From Hydrolagus affinis (taxonomy: Eukaryota), in assembly GCA_012026655.1 (NCBI GenBank), contig JAAILG010000182.1, forward strand, positions 1 to 64,000: DNA of 64,000 nucleotides. The letters are read 5' to 3'. Under the pieces are notes generated by a model. The model saw nothing but the letters and a program-made list of their open reading frames with translations. It was not told the DNA's origin and made no database searches. The position numbers and the translations under genes are program-made. Each line of letters starts with the position of its first letter. The first letter of the stretch is position 1. Positions 166 through 56,755 of this stretch are shown in pieces.

Positions 166-564
166 TACAGTAAAACCCGCGTAATTCTGACCTGTATAAA
201 TCATGTAATTGCCAAATTGTACATCTATCCAAGTTCTGTTCAACAATTTATATTATATCGGGGGGGAAATGACCATGGATTTATGTGATGTGGACCAACG
301 CTGGAAAACGAAAGCATTCAAGGTCATTGGCAGCCTCTATTCTGCGAGATACCTGTTGTTGACAACAGACCTGACAATATCTCCTGTACTTTTCATTGCT
401 GTACAAACAGCTATTTGTGTTGAAGCTTTTTATCAGTATCCAGCTGTCATTCAATTTCTAACCAGAGTAATTAACTGTTCCTGTACTGTTGACCTTGAAA
501 GTTACATAACTTTCTTAAAAACCTAATCCTATTTGATTTAGGTTATTTTTAAGCCACAGAAGCA

Positions 565-672
565 CTTGTGTGCACAATTGGCTGACGCGTTTTGCCCACA
601 AATTACACAATATATTCTGTAAAGCGCTTTGAGACATCTCAATGACGTGATGAATGCAAGGATTATTTATTA
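565..672 (+). mobile_element. 3' fragment of the Deu-domain SINE family
   Basis: Contains GTGCACAATTGGCTGACGCGTTTTGCCCACAA...GTAAAGCGCTTTGAGACATCTCAATGACGTG...ATGCAAGGATTATT, the same tail as the full-length copies. Confidence 0.6.
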
Positions 673-1394
673 TTAAGAAAACTTGAAACATCTCGGCAGA
701 ATACAGAAGCTTTCAATGTATCATTTGTAAAGACAACTTGAAATGTTCATGGGCATCTTGACACAAATGTCGCTGTATTTGGGGAAACAAAGTTGCAGAA
801 TTTCAATGAAACTAGTTTTTATAAAAGGAGCAAGATGGCTTTTGCGATGAATTACTATTTAATAAAAGGTTATTTGTAACTGTCCAGATATGTCGATCAA
901 AACTTATTTATCCTTTACGTGTAAGACTTATCTTTAAAAACACCCTTTTCAGGATTCAATGTCAAAGGTTGCGCAAAACATTTGCGGTAGGAGATGATTA
1001 TGTAATACCGTGGTTCAAAACAAATTCTTTATTACATCCTGTTTATCTTGTCCAATTAAAACAAACTTAGGCCGTTGTTTACTTTTATGCAGCAACATTT
1101 TTGACTTCTCATTGACTTCTGGGCGTTTTGCAGTGTTTTATTATTCTTTACACAAACGTGCGCTTTGATATTGTGACTATTCAGCTGTTTCATTCCCTAG
1201 TGTAAATGGGCCATGAGGTCTTGGCTCTGGAAAGCAGATTTGAGTTGTAATATCATCATTTATACAAAAAAAAGAATAATAAAAGCAGGAGGTTTTGTGT
1301 CAGAATCGAATCTGTAAAATAATAACTTTTGCATTTGATTCAGTGCCTTTCAAGTCGTAGAGTAGGTCTCCATGTGCTTCACGGGATTTACTAT

Positions 1395-1590
1395 CAAGTG
1401 GAGTCAGTATGTCTTTTGTAGGCAAATGTGACGGCCAATTTATGCACGGCAATGCCCCACAAACAGCCATGAAGTGAATGTTCTGAATGTATCCAGTAAA
1501 CTTTTGGCCTGGATGCCGGTGGGCACGTTTTGGATAATGCCATGTAATCTTTAATGTTCACTTGAACAGCTAGATAGGATATCTTCTTAA
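1395..1590 (-). mobile_element. Old SacSINE1/AmnSINE1-like Deu-SINE fragment
   Basis: Reverse complement of the Deu core (GGCCAATTTATGCACGGCAATGCCCCACAAACAGCCATG) plus a degenerate upstream body similar to 61043-61403. Confidence 0.45.
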
Positions 1591-2984
1591 CATTTCATCT
1601 CATCTTCCTAATATTACAAGTCAGTGCACCCACACCCACCCTTCCCCCTCCACACACCCTTCCCCCTCCACACACACACACCTGGAATGTTAATCTATTC
1701 TATGCTCTTTTTGGAGCAAGGTTTTGAGAATGTGCAGCTGGTAAAACTGAGGGAGACAAATGGAGGTTGTGTGTGGCCCTGGCAGAGTCTCTATTCCAGA
1801 AAATTGCAAAATTGGGATGAAGGTACACATCACACACGCTAGTCTGTATACTGTGTAGAGTGAGATAGTCTTGGAGTATTACCGACATGCCTGGTTGAGG
1901 AAATGAACTACTGTACCAAATAAATTTTGCTAGTAAGTCTAGTCAATTTTGCCAACAAAATATGCAGTCAATTCACTTTACAATGTATTCTGTGCGATAT
2001 TTATTAAATGCAAGATGCTATATCAAATGCAAGGATTATTATGGTCAAGGAAATCCTTCTCATCTCTATTCAAAAGTGACCAACTGAGTTGGTGTAACCA
2101 TATTTAAAGATTGCACTTGAGAAAGTGAAACTATCAGAATGAGCAAAATAATAGATGATTTAAATGATGAGTAAAATAATCTTAGGATTGATGAAAGCAT
2201 TTTATTGTATCCACCACTTTGTTTTAACCTATGTAACTACAGAAAAAAATGTGAGTCAAACAATAATCTGCTGTGGAACAAATGAGCAATATCTAGCGAT
2301 GCCTTAGAAAATATCTCTCTAAATGTTAGACTGGAATCCACCCAAGTGATTCAAATGGCTTTATAATTCATGAGAGAGAAACCCTGGGTGGTTTATTCAT
2401 GCGTCCAAGCCCTTTACAGATTATAAACTGCAATGGAACAGTCCATTCAATGTTATAATAAACTGGAGGACCATAGATCAACAAATCATTATAATGTAGG
2501 GTTTTCCAATTTGCTAAACTGAAGCTCCCGTCTTTCAACTTGCTCTTTCTTTAGTTCCGTTATTATCTTGTTGTGCCGAGTGATTTTGACAACATTCAGA
2601 AATGAGATTGGTGTGTGAGTGGGGATATAGACTTCTATTCTGCAGCAATGTTTGCTTGTAGTATATAAGGCATCTGTTAAACAGATGGACCAAAAAAAGC
2701 ATTAATGTAAATGAGAGAATAGGAATACAAATTCCTCACACTTCGCTTTTACACTGTGTCAACCCAGAAACGAATTCACCAATGTTGGAAGGTCAGGCCT
2801 TTCATCCCACTCAAATTTAATTGTTCTGTTTCCAAAGCTGCCTTTTGCACTAGTTGGAAGCTCTAATAAATCTAAAATAAGGGTTACAGTGCATGTTACA
2901 AAATAAGCGTTAGCTTTGAATTTCGCTGCGTTTTAGAGTAATTAAACATTGAGTTGGCTGATTTTTTTTTCATTTTTGATAGTA

Positions 2985-3262
2985 ATAACAACAACTTGCA
3001 TTTATACAGCACCCTTCATGCGAGGTAGTGTCTCAGAGCATTTCACAGTGGTAGATTCTGACACTGAGCCAGGAGGAGAGGGAACGGAGAGGCGACCGAT
3101 CAAAAAAGAGAGTGTTTAGGTGGTCTACGAAGGTAGTGAGGAAGGTGGAAAGATGGAGGGACTGAGATAGAGAGTTTCAGAGTTTGGAGCTATAGTGGCT
3201 GAAGGCTGACACTGATGGTGCAGGGGACGAGGAACAATCAGGAGACCGGTGCCAGCCAAGCA
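2985..3262 (-). mobile_element. L2 LINE 3' end lying in the APOBEC4 3' UTR
   Basis: The minus strand gives a degenerate L2 ORF2 end (GLLIVPR...FSHYAPKL-NSL-like), the CCTGGCTCAGTGTCAG motif shared with 45235-45565, and a tail ending ATAAATGCAAGTTGTTGTTATT. Confidence 0.7.
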
Positions 3263-3278
3263 GAGGCTGAGGCTACAT

Positions 3279-4337
3279 TCATTTTGAAAACATTTGCTTT
3301 TTTCCTCTCCTGCTTTTCTTTAAGCCGGCTGGCGTAATCTTTGTATGAATTTCATAAATGTTCACTTCCACTGGGCGTCTGTTGCCTGGGGTTGGCAAGA
3401 CTGAAGGTTTCTGTTCAGACAGCTTGGGCATGTTGAGGTGTCTCACGACTTTCTTTGGTTTTCCTGCCTGTGGTGGGTTTGGCCTCATTGACCAAGGCGC
3501 CATCATTGAGTTCAGGAAGCCTGCGTACTGTTGCTGCAGAGCTATCAATCTGCCATTTGGAACTGGAGGCAGAGGTGGTGGTTTTGGAGCCAAATTGACA
3601 GGTTTTCGTTGAGTGAACGCATCCGCGTATGAAGGGTTAACTCCGGTGATGGCGGCTATCTGTTGGGCATTGTGACAGTCTGCAGATGCCCTCGAGGCCA
3701 AAACTGAACCGCGGTGTTCGTGAGGCACGCTGTTCACATATCTGTGTACAAGAATGGACCACATCCCACTGCAGATGGGACTGATGGTCACCCTGGGCCA
3801 GAGGGCGGCCAACCTGTGCAGCGCTTGTCGATTCCATCCAGCTTCAGGAAAGCCCTCATCTGTGTGGTAGAGCTGAGAAAAGTAAATGTCCAGCCGAGCG
3901 CTGGGATAGTTCAGCAGGAAATCGTGCATTTTCCTCACGCATTGTTGCATTGATTCATTGCATGGGGTGTAATTGGAATACAGAGTAATGTAGGCAATGT
4001 TACCATAAGAATACATGAGCGAACTCAGATACCCATCGGTGTCGAAGAGCATCGACTCTGGATGAAGCTGGTGTGAGGTGCAGTTAGTCACTTGCCCTTT
4101 CTGCAATAAAGTCCCAGACGTCAACTTAAGTTCGTAGAACAGAAGATGCCGGCTGCACTGCGGTTGCCCGTAGGGGAACCCGAACGTCTTGTAGAATTCC
4201 AAGAAGCTGACGCGAGCTTCTTCCCCGGTTCTGATGTGATACGGACACTTTTGGCAGCCTGCGGTGAACTGCAACCATGAGTAAGGCTTCACCAGAGTTC
4301 CTTGAGGAGCAATGTATTCTTGGTAGCTGGTAGCCAT
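3279..4337 (-). CDS. APOBEC4: APOBEC4, putative C-to-U deaminase of the AID/APOBEC family, 352 aa, CDS in one exon
   Basis: The protein follows recalled human APOBEC4 along its length: KPYSWL, CQKCPYHIRTGEEARVS, FGFPYG, FYELK, HPESMLF, LYSN-x-x-PCNE, IYFSQLYHT, WNRQAL-x-x-LA-x-LWPRV, AITGV-x-P, VVRHLNMP and a basic C-terminal tail. It has the Zn motif H92-x-E94...P-C126-x6-C133 and a strong Kozak context (ACAACG-ATG-G). Confidence 0.97.
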   Translation of the reverse strand: MATSYQEYIAPQGTLVKPYSWLQFTAGCQKCPYHIRTGEEARVSFLEFYKTFGFPYGQPQCSRHLLFYELKLTSGTLLQKGQVTNCTSHQLHPESMLFDTDGYLSSLMYSYGNIAYITLYSNYTPCNESMQQCVRKMHDFLLNYPSARLDIYFSQLYHTDEGFPEAGWNRQALHRLAALWPRVTISPICSGMWSILVHRYVNSVPHEHRGSVLASRASADCHNAQQIAAITGVNPSYADAFTQRKPVNLAPKPPPLPPVPNGRLIALQQQYAGFLNSMMAPWSMRPNPPQAGKPKKVVRHLNMPKLSEQKPSVLPTPGNRRPVEVNIYEIHTKITPAGLKKSRRGKKQMFSK

Positions 4338-4400
4338 CGTTGTTCTTTATCCTGATCCAATTCCAAGGAAAACCTCATTGCAGTAGATAATCCTTAAAGA

Positions 4401-4415
4401 CTGTGAAGTAAAAAC
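4401..4415 (-). promoter_or_regulatory. Candidate splice acceptor of the APOBEC4 coding exon
   Basis: The minus strand reads GGCAGTTTTTACTTCACAG|TCTTT, a pyrimidine tract plus AG about 64 nt upstream of the ATG. A weaker alternative AG lies at 4352-4353 (GGATCAG|GATAAAG). Mammalian APOBEC4 has a non-coding first exon. Confidence 0.5.
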
Positions 4416-4520
4416 TGCCATTAAATAAATCGTCGCTCTGCATGACTTGTGCAACAGTGTTCACTAATGTTCCCCCATTACATCAATCATTTTGCTGTTT
4501 GATCATGTAGAGGCCTTTCA

Positions 4521-4608
4521 GGAACATGGGAACAGGAGTCAGCCATTCCTCCCCTTGTGTCTGTTCTGTTAGACGGTGGCTGATCTGTACATCAACTCCA
4601 TTCACCTG
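4521..4608 (-). mobile_element. CR1-type LINE 3' tail fragment
   Basis: GGAACATGGGAACAGGAGTCAGCCATT...GGCTGATCTGTACATCAACTCC is a degenerate version of the tail at 59432-59570. Confidence 0.5.
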
Positions 4609-4609
4609 G

Positions 4610-4775
4610 GATTATTACCCCCAGACAGCGATCCGGCAATTAAATAACAACTGGTTTTGTACTTACTGCTAGGTAAACAGAGGCGTGTGGAGTAAGGAAA
4701 CTTGCCAAAGGTTTTGCCCCACCCGAGAATCGAACCTGGGCCCACTCGCTTACAAGGGGAGCATGCTAAGTATTT
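4610..4775 (-). mobile_element. tRNA-derived SINE 5' part (long subfamily)
   Basis: Minus strand shows a B-box-like GGTTCGATTCTCGG, then GGCAAGTTTCCTTACTCCAC and CTCTGTTTACCTAGCAGTAAGT. Confidence 0.7.
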
Positions 4776-5199
4776 CAGTCTGCATGTAAAAAGGCCTGAT
4801 GTGAAGTTGAATGTTAAAAGCAGGTGGAGTAGGCTTGGTCTTTCTTTACAGTGCAGAGCTAGTGTTTACCTGTTACCAGGAGACTGTTGAGCTTGAGCAG
4901 TTGCTGTCATAGTTCTTCGCCTTTTTCATCATTTTATTCCAAACGTCTGTCTTCTGTTCGTATCAATGTTTAGTGAGTTTGGTGAGACCGGCCCATACAG
5001 CAGAAGATACTAGTGTACTATAAATCTTCCACCTTTTAGACGGAGTATTTTCTGGTAGTTTCAGTGAGGGAGGGTGCAGCTGTAGATTCCTTTCTCAAGC
5101 AAAGCAATTGATCACTGAACCTGACTCCATGGCAATAAGTGTTGACACATGTGTTAAAATAAACCACAAGATACATACAGGTCTTGGCTTCCTTATACA

Positions 5200-5503
5200 T
5201 AATATAATCCTTGCATTTGATATAGCGCTTTTTACCTCTTCTAGATGTCTCAAAGCTCTCCACATAATATACTGTCAAGCGAATTGACTGTATATTTATG
5301 GGCGAAATGCGTTAGCCAATTGTTCACAGCAGTTGGCCCATAAACAGTCATGGATTGAAATGACCAATTTTTTTTTTTTTCTTGAGAGATTATTATCAGG
5401 CGTGTGGAGTAAGGAAACTTGCCCAAGATTTTGCCCTGGCTGGAATCAAACTCAGGTCCTTCGCTTGCAAGGCGAGTGCTTCAACCACTGAGCTATAGGA
5501 CTC
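5200..5503 (-). mobile_element. Full-length tRNA-derived Deu-domain SINE (short subfamily)
   Basis: Has a tRNA head (TCCTATAGCTCAGTGGTTGAAGCACTCGCC...GTTTGATTCC; A/B boxes), GGGCAAGTTTCCTTACTCCAC, a Deu-like core, a hairpin tail and a (TTA) end. Confidence 0.85.
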
Positions 5504-5719
5504 GGATAGATGTAGCTGTGTGTATGTTTTTTAACAAAATGGACTGTTTGTCAGAGATCGCACTATAGTTTCCTAAAATGATCAGTTCATTGAATGTCAC
5601 AACAGTAGAAATGAGAATTCCGATAATGTATTGTATTCAACAACTTTCATTTATATTAGTGGCCTTTATGCAAGATAACTTCTTAGAGTTCTGAGCAATA
5701 GCAATGGAGTTTGATGCCT

Positions 5720-5950
5720 TGCTGGGAAGAAAGGGGAGGCGATAGTTCAAAGAGGAAAGTCTTCAGGTACAAATTTGTAGAATGATAAAGGGGGGGCAAG
5801 ACAGAGGGTTGAGGCAAGGAGCTCCAGAGCTTCAGGGCCTAGGAGCTGAAGGTGTGTCTAGCAATGTTGGAAGGGATGGGTTAGGGACGTTCAGAAGACC
5901 TGAGCTGACCCAGCAAAGGTAGAGGAGTGGGTGAAATGGAACATTTGAGT
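5720..5950 (-). mobile_element. Degenerate L2 3' fragment
   Basis: Purine-rich plus strand with GGAGCTCCAGAGCTTCAGGGCCTAGGAGCTGAAGG, the antisense of an L2 FS-x-x-GP-x-LWNSL-like end. Confidence 0.45.
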
Positions 5951-7714
5951 TTAATAATTAAGCAGGTCATACAATATACTTATTGAAAACAACTCTGAGA
6001 ACTATGTTTCGGTGTCATCAAAATACCAAGTTTCAGCAACTACTTCCATCTTCCATAAGGCTTTTTAAAAACAATTCTGTAGTTGGTTTAAAACAGTTAT
6101 TAGTTCTGACTGCAATGGGTGGCATTTTGTAGACTTGAGGGAATGAGATTTGCTAGTGCTTTAGTCAGATTTCGATCATTGCTTGACATGTAGATTTGTA
6201 GTATTGTGTAACTAGGATTACATTAACACCAGAATTTGGATTCCAAAACTGTCTTTCCAGTAATTATGATTGCGCTCGACTGGCTTTGGGTTCAGGGCAC
6301 ACTTGAAACCATTCATAGGTTCCGTTTCCAGTGTAAGAAGTGATTCATTATCTCGAGTGATTTTGGCAAGCTTAAAGAATGATTTCCTCTCATTATCCCC
6401 TGAGTGTAATGCTAGGAACTATAAGTGCGCCAGACTCCACGTGCAACCATCCTGCACTCTAGTGAAACAGGGTCAAAGTATCAAGTTTCTTTAAAATTCC
6501 TTTTCAATGCATTAAGATGCAAAAAAAAGAGTAGGCCAAGTTTCCTGGAAGCTGTTACTTATAGAGTAGTGACCGACCTCATCAGCATCCTGCAAGCTTA
6601 CACCTAACTTAGCATGTTTTCTTGCTGGCTAAACTCTGATGAGAGAGTTCCTTAGACTTGTATAGATCACCCTCAAAACACACATGGCAGCCAATTGCGC
6701 ACAGCAGTGTCCCACAACACTCAATGAGTGACCAAATTAGTTTGCAGAGTAAATATGCAAGAGGACTGAGGGTTGGTTTCAATGCGGCTTCAATGCAGGG
6801 AATTTTTTAAGGAATTGTCACTGGTGGGGATGGAACTCAAAGGGGCACTTTTATCCCAGAAGCATTAAAAACAGATATCTACCAATAAAGCGCACTCAAT
6901 GTGTTTGTTTCAAACTGTAGAATGGTTGAAATAATAGGAAAGCAGGAATCTAGTAAGTATTCATACAATGTCTTTAATTACCAAATAATATACTGTAAAA
7001 TCTGTCTAAAATTCTGTTTTTTTTAAAAAAAAACTGCCTAAACAGTGACTGCTTGATGACTGCCGATGAAATCACCATTACCTTTATTGTTGTTATTAAT
7101 ATTATGGAAGGGCAGTTTACTGGGCGGAAATTCTTGAGGGCTGGTGGGGATTTTCCCCATCACTTGTTAAAAAATGCCCTCCCTCAAAGTCATGCAATTT
7201 ATTGTCAATGGAATTTGAATTGGACAGTGTTTTACCACTGAGGACTGCCTTTATTTTTATGACAGCATGAGAAATGTCCACGGAGAGCAAATACGAGGAA
7301 AGTGAATGAGATTTTAAATACCGATGTTTCGAAGAGAAATTACTTTGGCTGAAACAAGGCTTTTTTCCCCCCTCTTCACACAGACAGATTTAAGATGATT
7401 TAAACCCACGGTCAGCATTACTAAGCTATTAGGGATTTCGGCCAAAAGAAAAAAAATACTGGTGGGTAGTTGAATGCGTGTATCACAAGCTGCCTTTCAC
7501 TTACTGTGCGACTGTGTGGTAAGCAGGCCCTTATAGTGATGTGACGCAAAGGAGCTTGAGTTGTGCAGTGAGTTAGTAGTGTGGGTGCTTATTGCTGAGC
7601 TGCATATTTGTGTTGGCAATGTCGATGCGTCATTCAATCAGCGTGTGAGGTGCTCCTGAGTATTATTTTCATTGAAGTTTAAAACTGAGTCTAGTTTTCA
7701 CCCATGAAATACAC

Positions 7715-7815
7715 AATGAATCCACTTTACAGTATATCCTGTGAAGCGCTTTGAGACGTCTCAATGACGTGATAAGGCGCTATATATCAAATTCAAGGAT
7801 GATTATTATTTTTAT
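7715..7815 (+). mobile_element. SINE 3' tail, little diverged
   Basis: CACTTTACAGTATATCCTGTGAAGCGCTTTGAGACGTCTCAATGACGTGATAAGGCGCTATA...GATTATTATT, with CpGs intact. Confidence 0.75.
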
Positions 7816-9169
7816 TATAATGTACTTTAACTTGCAGCAATACGTTTGAATGGGCGGTGGGATAGGGGACCAGTGAGAAAATGCAAGGCGGACATAGATC
7901 AAAGGGCTTGGTGCTATTTGTGAACCAAATACCATAAAAATTCCCAACTTATAGCACTCATTATGTGATATAGTAACCTGCATGTACCCAGTTCATTACC
8001 GTGTATAGTGTGCTGACCTTTATAATGTTAGAGCTGTGGTATAGCACACCATTGCTTGTTTTATTGCTTCTTTATGGTCTGCCAAAGTCCATCTGTTTAA
8101 AGCCCATTTCTTCACAGTAGAGTTGGCAATCAACTTTTTTTTCCTTTAGTCCTGGGTTCAAGGAAATAGGAATAGAACATGAACACTGGCAATCTACAAT
8201 CCTTTCTGAATGACGAGTGGTTAAAAAGCTGCGGGTGGGGGTGGGTGGGTGGAAGAGGGGAAGGAATCAAATTTTAACCTGAATTGTATGATAACTAGTT
8301 CACTCCAGATTCTGAAGTTGTCTGAGCTCTCTGGCTCCCTTCTTTCTCAAAGCTGCCAAATGTTGGGGAGTTTGCTCCCACCAACTCTTTTGAGTAAACA
8401 TTGTCATTCTGCTCATGTTTGTTCCCACTCGAATCATGTGGCTTTGTTCTCATCTGTTTCCATAGTTTCCTGTTTATATTGTGGTAAAAGTCTGAATGAA
8501 GCTGTGCTATTACCCTCAGGAGAGAGACAAGAGTTTATTAAATATTGCAATTTGGGAGCCTGGGTTCCATGATTCTGTAATAAACCATAATCCTTGCATT
8601 TATATTATGTCTGTAATGTCACAATGTCTTGATGTCACATCACTAAAAGGGCCAGTTTATCACAGTAAATGAAAAGCAACTTGTGATATAACTTTTTGAT
8701 GCACTTCTCATTTGATTGTGGTCAAATGGAATGGCTTTATTTTCTGCAAATACAGTAACAAACGGGATGAGACATATAGCACCGCTCACACAGGGGATTG
8801 TCCCAGAACACTTATCTGTGGCAGAGCATGACACCAAGCCAGGGTGAGGGGGAATGCGTCCGTAAGCATGGCCGAGGGGAAGGTCTTCAGCCACCACATA
8901 TATTAATAGGGCTATTGAGAATAACAATCAGCTTATGCAATAACCATGTTTAGAATCTTAAACCCAATCTACTGCTCCTTGTACCTTACTTCAAAACCCA
9001 ATCTAACAGATTGAAGGCCTTGGAATAGATTAACAGCCACCCTTTTGGTGGGAAGATAATGTTTGATGTGTAGAGACTTGGAGCGAAAATAGACTGGGTG
9101 AGACTGGGTGCTCTGATTGAGAAGACAAGTGTTGGGGTTTTACCAGCAAGAGTCTGCATAAACACTTGG

Positions 9170-9630
9170 AGTTCCAAAGCATATGGGCAGAGAGGCTGAA
9201 ATCCTGGTCGCTGACGGTAGGGCAGGTCAGGTGGGAGACATGGAGCAGGCCAGAGCCCGCCGAACGGAGGCAGCGGATAGGATGATAGTGGGGTCAGCAG
9301 GTCAGAGAGGTAGGAGGGGGCACAGCTGTGGAGGGCTTTGAAAGTGAGGACAAGAATCTTGAATTCTGTCCTCTGAGGAATGGGGAGCCAGTGGAGTCAG
9401 GTGAGGATGGTGGTGATGGGGTCGAGGAATCTGGTGCGAGAGAGGACATGAGCTGCAGAGTTTGGGATGATCTGTAGCTTGTGGGGGATGAGTTGGAGAG
9501 GCTGACAAGGAGGGAGTTGCAGTAGTCGAGCCTTGAGGTGACAAAAGCATGTGTAACGGTTTCAGCGGCCTGAGGGGTTAGGCAGTGACGGAGACGGGCG
9601 ATGTTGCAGAGGAGGTGGAAGGCGGTCACG
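9170..9630 (-). mobile_element. L2 LINE ORF2 C-terminal fragment (post-RT region), frameshifted
   Basis: Translation gives TAFHLLCNIARLRHCLTPQAAETVTHAFVTSRLDYCNSLL. Other frames give LHWLPIPQRTEFKILVLTFKALH and FSLSAHMLWNS. These are characteristic L2 motifs. Confidence 0.85.
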
Positions 9631-10189
9631 GCTGGTCATGGCTGGTCAAATGTTGATTTCATGTATCTTAACAAACTTAAGAGCGACGCATCTCTTTGAT
9701 TTGGTCAGTTGGGTGTCCAGGTAGATGTGGAAATCCATCGCTATAGGAAGTGAGGTTTTACAAACTCACTTTTGTATGTCCTTTACAAAAACGATAACCC
9801 GAATACATCTGTGTGTGATTCTCGTGAGCGTTTCAGTGGTGGATTGCTTGTTTAAAGAAAAGTGCTTAGAGACTTTTATGGCTCTTGGAGAGATGACTGC
9901 CTGCAGAGCATGTGCTGAACACATCAGGCAGCACGTGGACGGGAAGTGTCTCAGTCAGAGAAGCCGCTTGTGACCCAGGAATGATCTAAGATTTCCAGCT
10001 GGCAGGCCGTCCATTTAAATAATAATGAGTCAATTTAAAGCTTGCCTAGAGGAACATGTTTGGATGTTTAGCTATGAATGTGATGCTGTAACCTTTAGCC
10101 CACTGAGTAATTTACAGGTGAAATCTATATCTTGACATTTCGTGCTTGTTCAATAAATGAAAGCTCATTAAAAACAACAAGGTTTATAC

Positions 10190-10460
10190 AATGCAATTGA
10201 TATCTATCTACAGGCCCAAAACAACAGAGCAAGAGGGTACAGCGTTTAGGATGCAAAGGGCAACTTCAGGGCAGACACCAGGAAGTATTTATGGTACTGT
10301 ATTTATCCAGAGAATATCTAATAACTGGAACAGATTACCGGGAGGATAGTTGAGGCTATGACGTTCAGAATCTTAAGAAACTGCTTGAAGCTGTAATGGG
10401 AGGACAGTTGGGTAGATAATCTGCAAAGCAGGATATCAAATAGATTGATGGGACTTATTT
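10190..10460 (+). mobile_element. Degenerate CR1 LINE 3' fragment
   Basis: AGAGCAAGAGGGTACAG...GGGCAACTTCAGGGCAGACACCAGGAAGTATT...TGGAACAGATTACC...GTTGAGGC resembles the CR1 ORF2 end (TRGH...FF..R....WN.LP..VVEA). Confidence 0.5.
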
Positions 10461-12169
10461 TCAAAATCCGAGACTGTTTTATGATCTTGTTGTGAATAAG
10501 TGTTGCAAATGCTATTCTCTTCTAGCTGCGTATTCCTTTCATTTTACCATTGAGGTGCCTCTGTATCCACCTTAGGCGTTGTTGGAGTTTTAAAGTTAGG
10601 GTCTTTGCAGCTTCTTGTGCATTACCAGGGGAGATGTGGAGACTATATGAAACCTGGAGATTCACAACCGGTTAACTGATCCATCCTTCTATTTCATGGC
10701 CAACATTGCAGGTGTTTTTTTTTTTGAGGTGGTGGATTTTAGCTTGCTGCAGAAGAGCTCAGGACCTCAGAGTTAAGTCCATTTGTGGCAGTTCCAGAGA
10801 TGATATTTAACCCATTAATCTCTTTGGTTTAGATGGTGCTCTTAATTGCTGAATCCAATCGATCCCTGGTTGGGGTGTGCTGTTTCTTAACCGCTTTGAT
10901 CAAAAGATCACAACTTGAGCTTGGTTGAAGAAGTCCATTCGGCCTATTTGAAATCCTTCCAGATCACCATTCCATCTACCATCTTCCGATCACAGTATTA
11001 AGCTTTTTTTTTGCTTTTGAAAATGAAATAGCCAAGCAACCAAGATAGGTAGGCACTTAGTTAGGGAAACTGAAAGTTTCTCACCTTCAATCATACGCTT
11101 CTCAGTCGAGCATGTTTTGTCTAGTTGTTAGATTGAGAAACCAGGTATTTTATGTATTAAGCAGTGTGGTGCTTTGATGTCTAACTGGCCTCAATTTGAA
11201 TTGTAGAATTCTCTAGCTGAAGGTCCATCTATCAGCCTGGAGAAGGGAAGTCTTCGAATTAGACTGTTGTTGCATTTTAAAGAAAAATACATTCACATAT
11301 GCTCATGCTTTTCCCCCAGGAATGAGGTGGTATAGACCGAAACATGTACGTTTTGTAATCAGAGAGATGGTTTTGATCAACAGTGCTGTGGTGCTTTGGT
11401 GTTTAAAGGTTCCTGCAGCTTGATCTGTTTATACAGGATTCTTTTTTCCTTGTCGAGTGGGAATGAGTGAGGGTGGGTGGAGAACTAAACCACATTAAAC
11501 CAGGTCACCCGAGAAAAACAAACTGCGTAGAAAATCCAGCAGCTCTATTTTATAACTTTTTAAGAAAATCAAGTTTTTCTTCCCTTAAAAGGGACCAGGA
11601 AAAGGGAAAGAATTTACATTTAAAATTGTCAAATAACTCACTGTATGTACAAATGTACTACAGATAATATTTTCACAGAGTGTACAGCGACAGTTGGGAC
11701 AAAACAGACTAGCATTTTTTCAATGGACTTTATCTCCATTCACCCAATGATATTAAAAACATCAAGCTTTTGTGAAAAAGCCTGTGATCTGCCTTCTCTC
11801 CACATATTACAAATCTCGAAGTTTGTTTTTTCACATTTTGGAAAATGACAGCAGCGCTTAGGAATGTTTTCATATATTGAGATGTTTTCTCTCGCGCTCT
11901 CCCTCTCTCCCTTCATTGGTGAAATGCAAAATATTTCAATCTTTCCCGTTTTTTCTCTTATTTTCAAAGTTAACCCAAAACAATTTGAAAAGATTTTGTG
12001 GAACAGATTACTGTATTGTGCATTTTCAGTTTGTTTAAGGATTAATCGGATTTAAAAACGACACCAGAGCAACAAAGGAGCATTTGTGTCAAACTGCAAA
12101 GGAGACTGTTATAAATATGAAGTAGTCCCTTGGCACCACAAGGATAGCTGTTTTTCTTCTCTCGCTTGC

Positions 12170-12198
12170 ACTCGCGCTCTCTCTCTCTCTCTCTCTCT
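12170..12198. repeat. (CT)n microsatellite
   Basis: Direct dinucleotide run. Confidence 0.9.
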
Positions 12199-12574
12199 CC
12201 CCCACTGCTCTTAGAGCAGGAGTCACGCAGTTTGTGTGGGAGCACGGTGCAGATTAACCCAGCTCAACAGTGCACTTCCGCCAATTGTTTCTGGACATCT
12301 CCCATTAAGGTTGGAAAGGGGGGGAGAAAAAAAAGCACCAGCCTTTTCTGGCGCTTGACAGCTTTCATCGTGGAAGAAGGCGTTTTTTTTGCGGACTCCT
12401 CTGGTAAACCCTGGCTGCTTTTGATCTCCGAGCACAGTTTGTTTTCAGTAGAGACAGCGAGATATCTGGTGAAACCCCACCAGAGCTGCCTGGAGGATGA
12501 CTTGCTCGAACAACGCTCTATATGATTCTGGTTATAACTCATGCTGAGTCAAGTGCAGAATATGGTCGAAAAGT

Positions 12575-12595
12575 ATGGCTTATTTCCCTTTGTTG
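12575..12595 (+). other. Candidate alternative first mini-exon (MAYFPLL, phase 0)
   Basis: AAGT-ATG-G (A at -3, G at +4), seven codons, then the strong donor TTG|GTGAGT at 12596. It follows a GC-richer UTR-like stretch (12150-12540). Upstream ATGs in other frames (12522, 12541, 12562) make the reading frame ambiguous. Confidence 0.3.
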
Positions 12596-13404
12596 GTGAG
12601 TACTGGCATAAGGCAAAAAAAATAATCTGACAATGGAAATACATCTCTTTCACGTTGCGACTTCCAAGTATTTGTTTAAAATTAAGTTTTAAAAGGCTTT
12701 ATGAGATTTGCCGACTGCATAAAATTTACTGGCAATTTAAAGTTGTTTAATATTAATGGGAACTATACGCACAGATTCTTACTTAAATGGAGACTATATG
12801 TATACAACCTACATCTGTAATGTAATGTGCCACACATTAGGATTTTTATTTAATGTATTTAAAGAATACTCTGAATTTGATGATCTTTCCTTCCTTAGTG
12901 ACCAAGGAATGTGGCAATGGATTTATTTTACCTAATCTGTTTGCTGATTTAGTATAAGGTTAATATGATGGATCTTGTATTGTTTTGTGCATGTTTGTCA
13001 CTGGTGAACGTTTATCATAGTATTTATACATATACATAAGTGCGACCATATATCTTGGATCAAAATTTTATTTTGTACTTTATAAACCCAGGAAAGCTTT
13101 TTGCCAAAAAGAAGCTTTTCTTCATGCAGTTGTGTTTTATATTTTTTCCATAAATATTAAATTTATCCTGGGATGCTCCATTGGGAATGTAAATTCCTAA
13201 CGAGCACACTGTAATATTGGCAGACAATATGCATTATCTTGAAATGGAAAAACTATCTCCTAAAACTACTCTTTATTGATTGATGAAGCGCTGTTCTATA
13301 TCAGTGCTTGGCATTTTGGTGATGGATAGAAAGCGATTAGTTCAGAAGCTAAATACTGTATTGGTATTTTCCCGGTTTAGCTTAAATAAGTCCTGTAGAG
13401 TCCT

Positions 13405-13712
13405 GTAATTCTGTGATTATTCTTGTTAGCACTCGCCTTGCAAGCAGGAGACTTGGGTTTGATTCCTGCTAGGGTGAAACTTTGGGCAAGTTTCCTTACT
13501 CCACATGCCTGATAATAGTCCCTCAAGAAAAAAATCAATAATAAATTGGTCACGTCAATCCACAACTGTTCATGGGACACTACTGTGTGTGTTTGGCTGC
13601 TGCATTTTGCCCACAAATATACAGCCAATTCACGTTACAGTACATTCTGTGAAGTACTTTGTATCTAGAAGACTTGAAAAGTGCTATATCAAATGCAAGG
13701 ATTATTATTATT
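13405..13712 (+). mobile_element. Full-length tRNA/Deu SINE (short subfamily)
   Basis: Head (AGCACTCGCCTTGCAAG...GGTTTGATTCC), GGGCAAGTTTCCTTACTCCAC, Deu core and an ATGCAAGGATTATTATT tail. Confidence 0.85.
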
Positions 13713-14959
13713 TTTATTACGAATATCCTGTGCTTGACAAGCGATTTATTGGGGTCTTTAGGAGGTTGGAATTTGACTCACTACTGTGCTGTCGGTTGGC
13801 CTGGTGACCTGACAATGGTGACCTGGTGAGAGATGCTTCCTTCTCGCACTGTAAGTTTATTGATGTCAGGGTCTGTCCACCATTGCTCACATCACACTTG
13901 CCAGGAAGTTCCTGGAAGAGTTGAAAGTGCTGTGCTTTTTTGTTTCTCTGCTGATATGAAATATATTCCTTAGTGAGAAAAAAGTTTGACCCCCAAGCAT
14001 CCCATAGTGCCGCACGTCAGGAAATAATGTTCAAGTGCTTATTGAGCGCTGAACTATGCCATGATTCGTGCTGGGTTTCTTAGTTCAATGGGGTGTTTTG
14101 TGAAAGGGGTTTGTGCACAGGCTTGCATTGGACAAAATAATCTAGTCCTTGTTTTGTGCATAATATTTTACAGCTCAAGTTTTCTGCAAGTGCTTTGTGC
14201 ATGAGGAATGTAGTTTTCAATGCAATTCTTCACAACCCCTTGATCCAGCTGGTGGTGCAAAGAGCTGTGTAATGTCCAGAACACTCCAAACACTGATTGG
14301 TCACTCATTCATGACTGTTTGTGGGACAAACTGCCACATTTTGGCGACAAAATACACAGTTAATCCACTTTACCAATACATTCTTTGAAGCATTTTGAGA
14401 CATCTCAATGACATGGTAAAGTGCTATATCAAATGCAAGGATTATTATTAAGCACAACAGCAAAATAGTAATAATGTTGGTGTGAATTAGAGCCTTTTAA
14501 CCAAATGGTCGTTGCAAGTCCTATCTCAAGACCCTCCTCTTCGACAGTGCCATCGGATACCCCGTTCTCCCCCATTCCCTCCACCCTCCCCGATCCCACC
14601 CCTAGCTTGGGTCCAAAACACTGACTGTCCAGTGCCTTGGGACGTCCTCAAGGACAATGTGAAAGGCGCTATACAAGTGTAATTTTGTTGTTGTTTTTGG
14701 TCCGTTCAATGTTTCAATCTGAATATTCTCTAATGTCACACGCTTGCTGAATTGTTTCTGAACAGTCAAATCTTTTGTAAGAATGCTTAACTTGAGAATA
14801 ATTTGTGAAATAGCACATGAGACTATCTTTGATCATCATTAACTCAGTCATTAGTCAACAGTTGTAATGAAATTGTAGAGAATTAGTAAGACAAAGATCT
14901 AAAAAGGAGAAATAAAGCAAGGTTTGGTTGGGAAAAAAGTTAGCATTAATTAGATAATA

Positions 14960-23269: not shown

Positions 23270-24527
23270 GTAATTTTCTGTTTTATGTAATATTGATATA
23301 AATGTAATTTTTACAGTTGTTGATATACTTGCATTTCATTTTTGGGCAGATGTCTTAAAGTGCTTCACAGGATTTACTGTAAAGTGTAACGACTTTATTT
23401 TGTAGGCAAATGCTATACATTTATGGGCTAGATAATGTGCAGAGTTTAACCTTTAGCGCATTGACGCACAACTGTCGATGTCTGGAAATTGCTGTCTTGA
23501 GTAATGGCTCTATTATGTCATTCACATTTCACTTTCTTCTGTCTTTCTACTGAGCCCATCTGAACCTGTACATGTCAGAATAGAACAATGGCGTGTTTAT
23601 CTTGATCAGGAAAACAAGATCTTAGTTTAATGTCTCATCTGAATGATGGCACCGCCAGCAATGCAGCAATTTCCCAGCACAGCGTTTGAGTATTCGCCCA
23701 GACTGTGATCTGAAAACCCCCGCATGGGGCTTGAATATCAACAATAACAACTTGCACTTATATAGGGCCCTTCCCATGGGGCAGCATCTCAGAGCACTTA
23801 AGCAATCCGGCACAATAGTCAATTATTATCATCTGCGGATTCAGACAAGCTGAGCACAAGACAGAAGGATGAACTAGGTAACAGAGCAGATACTTAGTCT
23901 GGAATTCTACTTCCTCTTTCAAACTTTGTACACAATGTGCATTACATACTTGGTCTCCAGAGAACTCACTGAGCTCAACGTGTGAAATTGTCTACCATAA
24001 CATCAATGGGTGGTTGTCATAAGTCCCCAGTCTCTCAGAGATCTTATCATTTCAATCATGAACACTATTAATTGCGCTCATTCATGTTGTCACACGGCAT
24101 CAGTCACTAGGTGTGTATTGCACTCACCATTCATGCAGGTATATTTGGGAAAGCAACAGATTACGTTGACGGAACATTTGTTTTTTTTAAACAAAAGTTT
24201 GGTTGATACCCTGATGTGATCTCAGGTGTTCCTGTGACGCATGGATCATTTTGGGGCAGAATTATTTTATCCTTGGGTTAAATTCAGTGGGCTACAAAAT
24301 CCACAGACACTCCACTGTATAACAACATCCTGCATTTATATATCAGCCTTTACACGGGGTAGCATCTCAGAGCACTTTACAGTTAAATGCTGGGTAGTGT
24401 TTTGAAACAAGATGTCTTCTCAATGTAAAACTTACTATATCCAATGTACAGATTATTTTTTTATTTAGGATTTATATGTAGGAGGCAGCTCCTGTAATCC
24501 TGCAAGCCAAAGCTTGGTTTGTATAAT

Positions 24528-24842
24528 ATAATAATAACAATCCATGCATTTGATAAAGCACTTTTTCCACTTCTTCTAGATGTCTCAAAGCACCTCACAG
24601 AATATACTGTATAGTGAATTGACTGTGTATATTTGTGGGTGTAATGCAGCAGACAGTTGTACACAGCAGTGTCCCACAAACAGTCGTGGATTGAAATGAC
24701 CAATTTATTATTGTTTTTTTTCTTGAGGGATTATTATCAGGCAGGTGGAGTAAGGAAACTTGCCCAAGGTTTCACCCTGACTGGAATCGAACCATGTCTC
24801 TCATTTGCAGGGCGAGTGCTCTAACCACTGAGCTACAGGAAT
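24528..24842 (-). mobile_element. Full-length tRNA/Deu SINE (short subfamily)
   Basis: The minus strand begins TCCTGTAGCTCAGTGGTTAGAGCACTCGCCCTGC...GGTTCGATTCC (clear A and B boxes) and continues through the Deu core and tail. Confidence 0.88.
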
Positions 24843-40449: not shown

Positions 40450-41512
40450 TCTAATAGAAAGAAAGCAGAGAGTTGTGGTGAGCAGCTATTTTTCAGACTG
40501 GAGAGAAGTGTGTAGTGGCATCTCCCAGGGATCAGTTTAGGGACCACTGCTCTTTTTAATATATATTAATGATCTGGACTTGGGTGTAGAGAGCACAGTT
40601 TCCAAGTTTGCAGATGATACTAAGTTAGGGAGAATAGTAAATAGTGAGGAGGATAATAACCATCTGCAAGAAGATATAGATAAAATGGTAAAGTGGGCAG
40701 ACACATGGCAGATGAAGTTTAATGCAGAGAAGTATGAGGTGATACATTTTGGGAGAAGAAATTAGGGGAGGCAATATAGGCAAGATAGTACAATTTTAAG
40801 GGGTGTGAGGAAACAGAGAGACCTGGGGATTTGTGTTAGTGACTCTTTGAAGATGGCAGGACAGGTAGACAAAGCCGTTAAGAAGGCATATGGGATACTG
40901 GGCTTTATAAATAGGGGTATAGAGTACAAAAGTCAGGAAATGTTGATTAACCTCTATAAAACTTTGGTTAGGCCTCAGCTGGAGTACTGTGTCCAATTCT
41001 GGTCACCACACTATAGAAAGGATGTTAAGGCATTGGAAATGGTACAAAAAAGGTTTACTAGAAGGGTACCAGGATTGAGGGACTTCAGTTACAAGGAAAG
41101 GCTAGATAGGCTAGGTTTATTCTCTTTAGAACAAAGGTTGAGAGGGGACCTAATAGAGGTTTATAAAATCATGGGAGAATTCGACAGGGTGAATAAGGAA
41201 AAACTGTTTCCACTGGTGGGCAAATCTGTGACTCGTAGTCACAGATTTAAAATAGTTTCAAAACGAAGCAGAGGAGCTGAGGAGAAGTTTTTTCACTCCG
41301 CGGGTTATTCGAATCTGGAAAGCATTGCCTGAAAAGATGGTGGAGGCCGATTCGATAACAGCTTTTAAAAGAGAATTAGATCTTTATTTAGGGAGAACAG
41401 GTCTGTTAGGTTATGGGGAGAGAGCTGGGCAGTGGGATTGAGTTGCTCTTTTCAAAGAGCTGGCACAGACTAGATGGGCCAAATGGCCTCCTTTTGTGCC
41501 ATAAGATTCTAT
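40450..41512 (+). mobile_element. 5'-truncated CR1 LINE (RT domain to 3' end), inactivated
   Basis: Translation gives RKQRVVV...[44 protein letters not shown], then RDLGI...KKAYGILGFINRGIEYKS...LYKTLVRPQLEYCVQFWSPHYRKD...RLRGDLIEVYKI. It carries stops and frameshifts and ends with the tail GATGGGCCAAATGGCCTCCTTTTGTGCCATAAGATTCTAT. Confidence 0.95.
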
Positions 41513-47594: not shown

Positions 47595-47766
47595 NNNNNN
47601 NNNNNNNNNNNNNNNNNNNNNNNNNNNNNNNNNNNNNNNNNNNNNNNNNNNNNNNNNNNNNNNNNNNNNNNNNNNNNNNNNNNNNNNNNNNNNNNNNNNN
47701 NNNNNNNNNNNNNNNNNNNNNNNNNNNNNNNNNNNNNNNNNNNNNNNNNNNNNNNNNNNNNNNNNN
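47595..47766. other. Assembly gap (172 N)
   Basis: Run of N characters. Confidence 1.
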
Positions 47767-48654: not shown

Positions 48655-48950
48655 TGCATCGCAGACAATCACAAAATATACAGTCTACCCACTTTACATA
48701 TATTCTGTGAAGTGCTTTGAGACATCTCAATAACTTGATAACCTGCTATATGAAATGAAAGTATTATTATTATAGGTGGTCACGCAATCCACGACTGTTT
48801 GTGGGACACAGATTTGAACAAATTGGCTGCCAGATTTCACCCACAAAATACAAAGTCAATTCACTTTACAGTATATTCTGTGAAGCGCCTTGAGACAGCT
48901 AGAAGATGTGACTAGGCTCTATATCAAATGCAAGGATTATTATTTTATTA
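48655..48950 (+). mobile_element. Two tandem 3' halves of the tRNA/Deu SINE
   Basis: The tail motif ATATTCTGTGAAG(T/C)GC(T/C)TTGAGAC...GGATTATTATT occurs twice (about 48700-48772 and 48870-48950). The second copy carries the Deu core CCACGACTGTTTGTGGGAC. Confidence 0.75.
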
Positions 48951-54679: not shown

Positions 54680-54852
54680 TACAATAATAATTGATTATTT
54701 CAATCCACGATCGTTTGTGGGATACTGCTGTGCGCAATTGCCTACTGGGTTTCACCCACAAATATACAGTCAATTAAGTATATTCTGTGAAGCGCTTTGA
54801 GACGTCTAGAAGACGTGAAAAGCGCTATATCAAATGCAACGACTATTATTAT
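54680..54852 (+). mobile_element. Young tRNA/Deu SINE 3' half
   Basis: Near-consensus Deu core GCTGTGCGCAATTGCCTACTGGGTTTCACCCACAAATATACAGTC and a CpG-intact hairpin tail. Confidence 0.85.
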
Positions 54853-56755
54853 CCTGGGTACATGCAGATGTTGTTGAATTTATAGCAATACTAATAATCC
54901 TTATATCTCACACAGTGCCTCATCATCTCATTGAGATGTCTCAAAGCATTTCACTGAATATTTTGTAAAGCATGCTGTGGAGTATTCCAAGCATAAACCT
55001 CTTTGAAATTTAGCCTTTAAAGAGCTGGTAGTCCATTGGCTGAGATGTTAAGATTCTGTCGCTTAGTCCTTTAGATAAGTGGTAAAAGTCCCGTGGAGGT
55101 GTCCTTTCAAACAATCTGCCAGGCCTCTCACTTGGTCATTCACCTCACGCTATTGGGAAACTTTTCTCTGTGCTAAAATGGCAGCTGAGATTTCCTTCAA
55201 CAACAGTCTAGACAGAAATGACCCTTTCAAGTGTTTGGTGTTTTGAGGCTCCACAAAATGGAAGTTTGTTCTCTCTTGTTAGCACAGTGCTGCGTATTTT
55301 CAAATTCCCTTTTATGTTGCAAGGGTAATATTTAGAGTTGTGAATGGCAATTTCAGAACAGCCACAGGAAGTTTCTCTTTACCCAGAGAACAAGTTAATA
55401 ACTGGAACAGGTTTTGCTGAGAAGAGGGTTGAGACCAGGCTGATGGACTATTTTGCAAAAAGCAGCTCCATGCTGTGAAGAGAGAACGAAGTGTTGGTTG
55501 GTGGGTGGATGGGTGGGTGTTTTGGAGGGATGAGTTCAGATAGGCTGAAGCCTTCTTCACCCTCACTGATCTTGTGAACACAGATTTAGTTTTTGGCCCA
55601 CCCCACCGTTTTCTCAAGGAGTTTACCCAGCTGTGCCCTTAAAGCTCTACCATTGTTTTGAAGCTTTCAGGCTACTCTCAAACCAGCTGCCTTTGTTCTT
55701 GTGCCTAGTGTAAAAATAGAGACAGAATATGCCCTTTGATGTATTTTGTTGCCTTAATATCCCTTTGTTGAAGAGTAAGTGTTGTCATGGCGCGGCGTCA
55801 CAGTGCTTGAATGAGCTTTGCTAATGATGTGGCGGGTCACTGGTTCAGCCCTCAGCTATAACACGCGTTGAATCTTGTTCTCATGATACAGCAACAGAGG
55901 AGAACTGATCAGTCATCTTGGCCTGTGTTTATATTCTTGTATCTAGCTGCAGTCAGCCCGATAGCAGAATTGACTGGTAGCAGTCCTTCAGTATAATAAT
56001 AATAACCTTTACATTTGATATAGCACTTTATCATGTCATTGAGACGTCGCAGCGTTTCACGTAATTGACTGAAAAGTGGATTGACTGTATTTTTGGTGGA
56101 TTTTTTGTTCTCCTCGATTGATTTCCCTAAATGAATTCCCCGTTTACTTTTTTTTGGTATTATATTACAATTTAAATTTATATAGCGCCTAGCAAGTCAG
56201 TAGGACATCTCAAAGCTCTTCAAATGTAGTTGTTGAAATACCCACTTCACATTTTCAGTGCAAGATGTACTGTGATCATTGCATGTTCAACTGTGCGTAG
56301 GGATATTGTCAGTTCTTATCTGAGTCTACATGGCAATGAAGGGAGGCGAAAGTTTTCTTTCCGATGTCAAAGACAACCAATGGTCCTTTTATCTGACCGA
56401 GCAGTGTAAACAGTAGGGAGCAGTGAAATGGGAGGAACAGAAGAAAAGTTAATAATAATCCTCACAGTTGATAAAGTGCCTTTGAGTCTGATAGAGCTTT
56501 GCAGGGTTTCACAGTGAAGTGTGGCGACTGTGCGTTTTCCAGACGAATGAAAACACTGGTTAAAGTTTAAATCTTAAATTAACTTTGCGTGTCTGTGCAA
56601 ACTTTGGTTTACTTTATCTTCCACCGCCCAAAAAAAATCCTGTTGCCCTTTTACTTGTTGCCAAGCGCTAAATCTTCCTGTTCTGAATCTCAAAATAAAA
56701 GGAGGAAACGTGGTCTATACCTCACTTTGACGTGATCAAAACAAGGGATTGTGTC

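What the first reader, a model, noticed from the sequence alone, without database searches (positions are those of the whole stretch)
3279..4337. Intact APOBEC4 orphan deaminase in an apparently early-branching jawed vertebrate
APOBEC4 is the least understood AID/APOBEC member; no substrate or deaminase activity has been convincingly established. This copy keeps the catalytic Glu (E94), all three Zn ligands and the unusual long C-terminal extension. It sits in a repeat landscape suggestive of a chondrichthyan, which implies long-term purifying selection. That makes it a useful distant ortholog for finding the substrate. It is probably already predicted in databases, so the novelty is functional rather than the gene's existence.
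Basis: partly seen in the sequence, partly recalled or inferred. Interest (0 to 1): 0.7.

Follow-up and report, generated by a model that had tools for sequence, protein, structure and literature searches.

The report
Ordinary APOBEC4 gene of a chimaera
This is the intact, evolutionarily constrained copy of APOBEC4, a vertebrate deaminase-like gene of unknown function, in a chimaera-type cartilaginous fish; it is an ordinary ortholog of a gene already annotated in a dozen sharks, rays and a chimaera.

Summary
Observation confirmed. Window 3279-4337 (minus strand) is one uninterrupted 352-codon ORF. It keeps H92-P93-E94, P125-C126 and C133 (HxE-x30-PC-x6-C), the APOBEC4-specific second metal site (C28, C31, H34, C86) and a long disordered basic tail holding the VVRHLNMP motif.

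It is a true APOBEC4 ortholog:
- It is 83% identical to Callorhinchus milii APOBEC4, and all 120 listed hits carry that name.
- Its predicted fold matches human, rat, mouse and macaque APOBEC4 at E~1e-40. APOBEC1, AID, APOBEC2 and APOBEC3 match at ~1e-11.
- It is sister to C. milii (100/100) in a tree.
- The locus is collinear with the C. milii locus beside an RGL-like gene.

The host is a holocephalan other than C. milii.

Two qualifications:
- Purifying selection is real. Four-species ω is 0.24, and the CDS has 2 in-frame indels against about 12 per kb in the flanks. It is weaker on the holocephalan branches (ω≈0.48 against 0.19).
- Transcription was not shown. Three poly(A) single-cell RNA runs gave essentially no reads on the ORF.

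The copy is not an especially distant ortholog, because lampreys carry APOBEC4 with the same motifs. Function remains unknown. Low interest.

The parts
3279..4337 (-). Complete APOBEC4 coding sequence, a single uninterrupted ORF of 352 codons plus stop
   Evidence: Start context is agaacaacgATGG (A at -3, G at +4).
3618..4337 (-). Deaminase domain (residues 1-240) with catalytic H92/E94/C126/C133 and the second metal site C28/C31/H34/C86
   Evidence: AF2 pLDDT is mostly 88-97 in 10-residue blocks (80 for residues 1-10 and 231-240). Foldseek matches APOBEC4, APOBEC1, AID and A3. The residues are invariant or ≥90% conserved in 85 orthologs. About 71% nt identity to skate and shark loci over 4321-3627.
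3279..3617 (-). Proline- and Lys/Arg-rich C-terminal tail (residues 241-352), predicted disordered, ending in a basic cluster KKSRRGKK
   Evidence: pLDDT mostly <60. Composition. ω=0.45 tree-wide against 0.155 for the domain.
3424..3461 (-). Conserved tail motif KKVVRHLNMP (V298, R299, H300 invariant or nearly so)
   Evidence: This is the only tail segment that still aligns at DNA level to skate and shark loci, at 87-89%. H300 is invariant and V298/R299 are ≥90% conserved in 85 orthologs.
2340..2445 (-). Candidate 3' UTR / poly(A)-signal block (AATAAA at 2397-2392), about 880 nt after the stop
   Evidence: About 96% identical to C. milii, above the CDS average. No RNA support, and not conserved with elasmobranchs.
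166..14437 (.). Segment collinear with the Callorhinchus milii APOBEC4 locus. In C. milii an RGL-like gene (RasGEF_N/RasGEF/RA) lies on the opposite strand upstream.
   Evidence: blastn chain. Neighbour genes.

Best explanation
This is the single-coding-exon APOBEC4 gene of a holocephalan (chimaera) and the one-to-one ortholog of human APOBEC4.

Shown here: it encodes a roughly 240-residue AID/APOBEC-fold zinc deaminase domain with the full catalytic set (His92, Glu94, Cys126, Cys133). It also carries the APOBEC4-specific second metal-binding insert, built from loop 1 (Cys28, Cys31, His34) and loop 3 (Cys86). A roughly 110-residue disordered, basic, proline-rich tail follows, whose only deeply conserved element is VVRHLNMP. 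The gene is kept open by selection.

Inferred mechanism (about 50% likely): a zinc-dependent C-to-U deaminase acting on a narrow, conserved nucleic-acid target (RNA or ssDNA), probably in germ cells. The metal-stabilised loop 1/3 insert would shape the substrate groove. The basic tail would give weak nucleic-acid contact, and the VVRHLNMP motif would dock a partner. Needing such a cofactor, as APOBEC1 does, would explain why the human protein alone shows no activity in vitro.
For: Identity:
- 83% identity over 100% of its length to C. milii APOBEC4, and all 120 listed homologs are named APOBEC4.
- An exhaustive phmmer search of 1.84 billion representatives gave only 30 hits. Every one whose name was checked, apart from one APOBEC3 at E=3.5e-5, is APOBEC4, lampreys included.
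- Foldseek against Swiss-Prot models: four reviewed APOBEC4 entries at E 1e-40 to 4e-38, then APOBEC1, AID, APOBEC2 and A3 at ≥1.5e-11.
- ML tree: window + Callorhinchus 100/100, and Chondrichthyes 100/100.
- The locus is collinear with the C. milii locus and has an RGL-like neighbour.

Selection:
- ω=0.241, with ω=1 rejected at 2ΔlnL=211.7.
- Holocephalan tips ω=0.48, below 1 at p=5e-4.
- The CDS has 2 in-frame indels in 1056 nt. The flanks have 36 in 2946 nt, 31 of them not multiples of 3.
- Only 3 of 86 highly conserved columns are changed, all conservatively.

Mechanism:
- E94 is invariant, and H92, C126 and C133 are ≥90% conserved in 85 orthologs.
- The second metal site is described in PMC5889660, which also reports near-zero entropy at substrate-contact positions.
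- Human A4 is testis-enriched and binds ssDNA weakly through its poly-Lys tail (PMC4889046).
Against: No deaminase activity has been found for human APOBEC4 on ssDNA in vitro, or in bacterial and yeast mutator assays. Its only reported cellular effect, enhanced promoter-driven expression, survived the E95Q mutation (PMC4889046).

No transcript evidence was obtained here: three poly(A) single-cell RNA runs gave depth of about 0-0.5 on the ORF. Constraint on the holocephalan branches is only moderate, and neither tip branch alone can be told from ω=1 (p=0.12 and 0.63).

The tree had only APOBEC3 as a non-APOBEC4 outgroup. AID, APOBEC2 and NAD1 were compared only through profiles and folds.
Confidence: 0.9

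Rival explanations
1. It is the same gene, but it works without catalysis. On this reading APOBEC4 is a nucleic-acid- or chromatin-binding regulator of gene expression in germ cells, and the zinc sites are kept for fold stability, as has been argued for APOBEC2.
For: Human A4 lacks detectable deaminase activity, and its expression-enhancing effect persists in the E95Q mutant. The C134A mutant was not expressed, which suggests a structural role for the zinc site (PMC4889046). The basic disordered tail suits binding rather than catalysis.
Against: The catalytic Glu (E94) is invariant in 85 orthologs from chimaera to mammals, and the HPE...PCx6C motif is also present in lamprey APOBEC4. A purely structural zinc site does not need the Glu. 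Substrate-contact positions are reported as nearly invariant (PMC5889660).
Confidence: 0.4
2. The ORF is an untranscribed or recently inactivated gene in this species, and its reading frame is still open by chance.
For: No RNA reads fall on the ORF in three poly(A) runs. ω on the window's own branch is not significantly below 1 (p=0.12). That branch is about 2.4 times longer than the C. milii branch.
Against: About 4.4% of random substitutions in this CDS would create a stop, so roughly 90 neutral substitutions would leave it open with P≈0.017. Flank indel density predicts about 13 indels, mostly frameshifting, but only 2 in-frame ones are seen. All catalytic and metal ligands are kept, and only 3 conservative changes occur in 86 conserved columns. 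The tissue of the RNA runs is unknown, and APOBEC4 is testis-restricted in mammals, so their silence is weak evidence.
Confidence: 0.04
3. It belongs to another AID/APOBEC clade (NAD1), as the top Pfam score might suggest.
For: Pfam NAD1 (PF18778) scores 85.5 bits against 73.2 for the APOBEC4 model.
Against: The APOBEC4 Pfam model has only 74 positions. Rat and aardvark APOBEC4 show the same ordering, NAD1 117 and 107 bits against APOBEC4 76 and 84, although eutherians lack NAD1 (PMC5889660). So the ordering is an artefact of model length. The full-length alignment, tail motif, PCx6C spacing, second metal site and synteny are all APOBEC4 features.
Confidence: 0.01

Closest known systems
Callorhinchus milii APOBEC4 (putative C->U-editing enzyme APOBEC-4, 357 aa; P0001)
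   Same: 83% protein and 89% CDS identity. Same motifs at the same positions (HPE at 92, CxxCxxH at 28, VVRHL tail motif). Single-ORF gene in a collinear locus beside an RGL-like gene.
   Different: 59 amino-acid differences. There are two in-frame indels (3 and 6 nt), and the window protein ends 3 residues earlier. The window's branch is about 2.4 times longer.
Human APOBEC4 (Q8WW27)
   Same: 44% identity across the full length. Foldseek E=1.3e-40 over residues 1-352. Same HxE-x30-PC-x6-C motif (E95/C134 in human, E94/C133 here). Basic C-terminus.
   Different: The tail is shorter and has a mixed Lys/Arg end (KKSRRGKK) in place of the human KKKKKGKK run. No expression or functional data exist for the chimaera copy.
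APOBEC1, AID, APOBEC2 and APOBEC3 (solved structures such as 6x91, 5jj4, 8cx0)
   Same: Same deaminase fold over about 200 residues (TM by target 0.7-0.8, rmsd 2.4-3.8 Å) and the same zinc-binding H-x-E / P-C-x-C chemistry.
   Different: Only 13-22% identity. They have PCx2-4C spacing, and none has the loop 1/loop 3 metal insert, the roughly 40-residue N-terminal β-hairpin extension or the long tail. Sequence searches do not connect them at E<1e-3, except one A3.
Lamprey APOBEC4 (Lampetra fluviatilis, Lethenteron reissneri; P0163, P0129)
   Same: HPE...PCx6C and CxxCxxH motifs are retained. phmmer E 7e-34 to 8e-33 over residues 28-240.
   Different: They are longer (405-566 aa) with an N-terminal extension, and no VVRHL motif was found. 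They are more distant than any chondrichthyan copy.

Membership tests
APOBEC4 | Catalytic zinc motif H-x-E-x30-P-C-x6-C (six residues between the two Cys, not the 2-4 of other AID/APOBECs) | tested here: met
   H92-P93-E94, then 30 residues, then P125-C126, then 6 residues, then C133. The motif is as given for human A4 in PMC4889046.
APOBEC4 | Second metal-chelating insert: two Cys and one His from loop 1, plus one Cys from loop 3 (PMC5889660) | tested here: met
   C28, C31, H34 and C86 are present and invariant in the 85-sequence alignment.
APOBEC4 | Best reciprocal similarity to established APOBEC4 rather than to other AAD clades | tested here: met
   There is a 29-order E-value gap between APOBEC4 and the next clade in the fold search.
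APOBEC4 | Phylogenetic placement inside the APOBEC4 clade, congruent with the species tree | tested here: met
   Sister to C. milii 100/100 and Chondrichthyes 100/100, with an APOBEC3 outgroup.
APOBEC4 | Long C-terminal extension with the conserved VVRHLNMP motif and a basic end | tested here: met
   Residues 241-352. VVRHL at 297. Ends in KKSRRGKKQMFSK.
APOBEC4 | Conserved genomic neighbourhood (adjacent to or nested in RGL1, on the opposite strand) | tested here: met
   The window is collinear with the C. milii locus, whose neighbour carries RasGEF_N/RasGEF/RA. In Mobula and Scyliorhinus APOBEC4 lies inside that gene's range. RGL exons were not mapped in the window itself.
APOBEC4 | Germ-line (testis) enriched transcription | tested here: inconclusive
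   Depth about 0 on the ORF in three poly(A) single-cell RNA runs of unknown tissue. No gonad data were reachable.
Active cytidine deaminase (AID/APOBEC sense) | Demonstrated C-to-U activity on DNA or RNA | not testable with these tools
   Never shown for any APOBEC4. Negative for human A4 (PMC4889046).
NAD1 | Specific affinity to the NAD1 clade beyond the generic AAD fold | tested here: not met
   The higher NAD1 Pfam score is reproduced by rat and aardvark APOBEC4, so it is an artefact of model length.

The most novel reading that the evidence does not exclude
The 2.5-fold higher ω on the holocephalan branches (0.48 against 0.19, p=9e-5; in the deaminase domain 0.39 against 0.12) could reflect a real lineage-specific relaxation or shift of APOBEC4 function in chimaeras. 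The alternative is the general tendency of short, recent branches to show higher ω.
Probability: 0.25. Interest if true: 0.3.

Novelty: new member of a known kind. Interest (0 to 1): 0.15.

Why it matters
It matters little by itself. APOBEC4 remains the orphan of the AID/APOBEC family, and every additional intact, constrained ortholog confirms that the catalytic Glu, both zinc sites and the VVRHLNMP tail motif have been preserved for more than 450 million years. That argues for a real, conserved biochemical role. However, at least eleven chondrichthyan and several lamprey orthologs are already annotated, so this copy opens no new route to the substrate. Its practical value is as one more sequence for conservation and co-variation analyses, and as a second holocephalan data point showing weaker constraint in that lineage.

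Tried and rejected
(1) NAD1 membership, suggested by the top Pfam score. Rejected after one search showed the same pattern in mammalian APOBEC4.

(2) A splice acceptor just upstream of the ATG (ttcacAG at about 4403-4401), which would imply a non-coding first exon as in mammals. The AG is CAA in C. milii and no RNA supports it, so the 5' structure is left undetermined.

(3) Transcription check. The single read-laying run gave only repeat-derived reads. X5 behaves like a DNA run of a 2-3% diverged relative (flat word depth of about 45), so it is neither an RNA test nor the same individual.

(4) A 'window-only' foreground model gave ω=0.70. The three-ratio model showed that changes cannot be split reliably between the two tips (0.45 and 0.56). 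Only the joint holocephalan estimate is reported.

(5) More chondrichthyan CDS for the codon analysis. Four of the seven look-ups gave no DNA, through over-large files or no record, so the analysis rests on four species.

(6) Getting AID, APOBEC2 and NAD1 sequences for the tree. The exhaustive search did not reach them, and I did not type sequences from memory.

(7) Measuring the geometry of the second metal site. Model coordinates are not exposed to scripts.

(8) Literature search for APOBEC4 together with Callorhinchus found nothing.

Full report
**Observation**

The window holds one ATG-to-stop ORF of 352 codons at exactly 3279-4337 on the minus strand. No other ORF in the 64 kb exceeds 178 aa. 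Translation gives H92-P93-E94, P125-C126 and C133, which is HxE-x30-PC-x6-C. This is the motif and spacing reported for human APOBEC4, E95/C134 (PMC4889046). The start codon sits in a good context, agaacaacgATGG. tblastn finds no second copy in the window.

**Identity**

- The word-indexed search of 5.8 billion proteins returned 209 hits at E≤1e-3. All 120 listed are named APOBEC4. The best is Callorhinchus milii at 83% identity over 100% of the query. Sharks and rays follow at 54-60%, coelacanth at 57% and tetrapods at 40-49%.
- No hit was 100% identical. This species' protein is therefore not in that collection.
- An exhaustive phmmer scan of 1.84 billion representatives found only 30 proteins at E≤1e-3. 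Nine of the ten more distant representatives I looked up are APOBEC4 or teleost relatives, including lamprey proteins. The tenth is an APOBEC3 at E=3.5e-5. APOBEC4 is thus a sharply isolated clade, and the ORF lies well inside it.
- Pfam at first looked ambiguous, with NAD1 at 85.5 bits and APOBEC4 at 73.2. The APOBEC4 model has only 74 positions. Rat and aardvark APOBEC4 show the same ordering, 117 against 76 bits and 107 against 84. Eutherians have no NAD1 (PMC5889660). The NAD1 score is an artefact of model length.

**Structure**

- AlphaFold2 on an 85-sequence alignment gave a confident domain for residues 1-240 (pLDDT mostly 88-97) and a disordered tail for 241-352.
- Foldseek against Swiss-Prot models ranked human, rat, mouse and macaque APOBEC4 first (E 1e-40 to 4e-38, whole length). 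APOBEC1, AID, APOBEC2 and APOBEC3 followed at 1.5e-11 and weaker, over residues about 20-235 only.
- Against solved structures, the best matches are APOBEC1, APOBEC3G and AID at E~1e-10 and 13-20% identity. No APOBEC4 entry appeared among the 50 matches listed.
- In the 85-ortholog alignment C28, C31, H34, C86, E94 and H300 are invariant. H92, C126, C133, V298 and R299 are at least 90% conserved.
[quoted passage not shown] 2018 (PMC5889660). This copy therefore keeps the clade-defining second metal site as well.

**Phylogeny and synteny**

- An ML tree (LG+C20+F+G4, 32 sequences, APOBEC3 outgroup) places the ORF as sister to Callorhinchus (100/100). Both sit inside a monophyletic chondrichthyan APOBEC4 clade (100/100).
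- The C. milii locus (L001) aligns collinearly with window 166-14437. Identity is about 80-83% in blastn blocks, and 82-91% in gap-free stretches, for non-coding DNA. It is 89% in the CDS.
- In C. milii an RGL-like gene (RasGEF_N, RasGEF, RA) lies upstream on the opposite strand. In Mobula and Scyliorhinus APOBEC4 lies within that gene's range.
- From my own knowledge, human APOBEC4 lies beside or within RGL1 at 1q25.
- The host is therefore a holocephalan other than C. milii. Earlier notes on other pieces of this genome also speak of chimaera-type immune loci.

**Selection**

- Pairwise against C. milii, dN=0.085 and dS=0.23, giving ω=0.37 (bootstrap 0.24-0.56). The domain gives 0.31 and the tail 0.50.
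- A four-species GY94 model (window, C. milii, Amblyraja, Chiloscyllium) gives ω=0.241. Fixing ω=1 is rejected, with 2ΔlnL=211.7.
- My own implementation reproduces that likelihood exactly. It shows that the two holocephalan tip branches have ω=0.48 against 0.19 elsewhere (p=8.6e-5), and that 0.48 is still below 1 (p=4.7e-4). In the deaminase domain the values are 0.39 against 0.12.
- Taken singly, neither tip can be distinguished from ω=1, with p=0.12 and 0.63.
- Independent signs of constraint are strong. The CDS has 2 indels (3 and 6 nt) in 1056 nt. The flanks have 36 in 2946 nt, 31 of which are not multiples of three.
- About 4.4% of random substitutions would create a stop, so roughly 90 neutral changes would leave the frame open with P≈0.017.
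- The copy departs from only 3 of 86 highly conserved columns (L197V, F200Y, P211S). The median across orthologs is 2.
- Against skate and shark loci, only two DNA stretches of the locus still align. One is the deaminase domain (4321-3627, about 71%). The other is a 35-nt piece (3461-3424, about 88%) that encodes KKVVRHLNMP.

**Transcription**

The only RNA runs served were three poly(A) single-cell libraries of a closely related or identical organism. They gave depth 0-0.5 over the ORF. All of their abundant reads fell on interspersed repeats. The fourth run (X5) has flat word depth of about 45 over unique sequence and 2-3% differences, so it is DNA of a close relative. Transcription is therefore not shown. 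Because mammalian APOBEC4 is testis-restricted (PMC4889046) and the tissue here is unknown, this is weak negative evidence.

**Mechanism**

*Shown:* an AID/APOBEC fold with all catalytic and both metal-site residues, a conserved tail motif, and purifying selection.

*From the literature:* human A4 is testis-enriched and has no detectable ssDNA deaminase activity. It binds ssDNA weakly through its poly-Lys end. It enhances promoter-driven expression independently of E95 (PMC4889046). Substrate-contact positions of APOBEC4 are nearly invariant, which suggests a conserved target (PMC5889660).

*Inferred:* most likely (about 50%) it is a cofactor-dependent C-to-U deaminase with a narrow, conserved germ-cell target. 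The main rival (about 40%) is a non-catalytic nucleic-acid-binding regulator.

**Verdict**

This is a correctly spotted but ordinary ortholog. At least eleven chondrichthyan APOBEC4 proteins are already annotated, and lampreys carry deeper ones with the same motifs. The copy is therefore neither novel in kind nor uniquely informative. The one mildly interesting result is the significantly weaker constraint on the holocephalan branches. That needs denser sampling before it can be believed.

Noticed in passing
window 2340-2445 (minus strand): A block of about 100 nt, 880 nt downstream of the APOBEC4 stop, is about 96% identical to C. milii, higher than the CDS. It contains AATAAA (2397-2392). 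It is a candidate poly(A) signal or 3' UTR element, and it is not conserved with the skate and shark loci.
   Followed up: partly
window ~401-800, 1401-1600, 1801-2200, 2801-3200, 4601-4800, 5201-5600; further copies near 13540-13720, 24520-24720, 48670-48950, 54680-54970: Very high-copy interspersed repeats, probably SINE-like. Word depth is 1e4-5e6 in a DNA run, with hundreds of RNA reads. They are shared with the C. milii locus and account for essentially all RNA-seq signal in the region.
   Followed up: no
window 40805-41332 (+) and 9294-9629 (-): ORFs whose translations look like the C-terminal part of LINE reverse transcriptases (...LEYCVQFWSP... and ...RLDYCNSLL...). This rests on my recollection and was not run against a family library.
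   Followed up: no
window 47595-47766: A run of 172 N (assembly gap or mask).
   Followed up: no
window ~4376-4378 (minus strand), about 40 nt upstream of the start codon: An out-of-frame upstream ATG is conserved in C. milii. If it lies in the 5' UTR, it would open a short uORF overlapping the main start. The transcription start site is unknown.
   Followed up: partly
runs X1-X12 against window 3000-4700: Every public run that holds this stretch shares only about 25-53% of 31-mers, and the laid contigs differ by 2-3%. They are probably a sister species or a divergent population.
   Followed up: partly
P0128, P0129, P0163 (lamprey proteins): Lamprey proteins annotated as APOBEC4 keep HPE...PCx6C and CxxCxxH. 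They carry a 70-100-residue N-terminal extension and lack the VVRHL tail motif. They are the deepest vertebrate orthologs seen here.
   Followed up: partly
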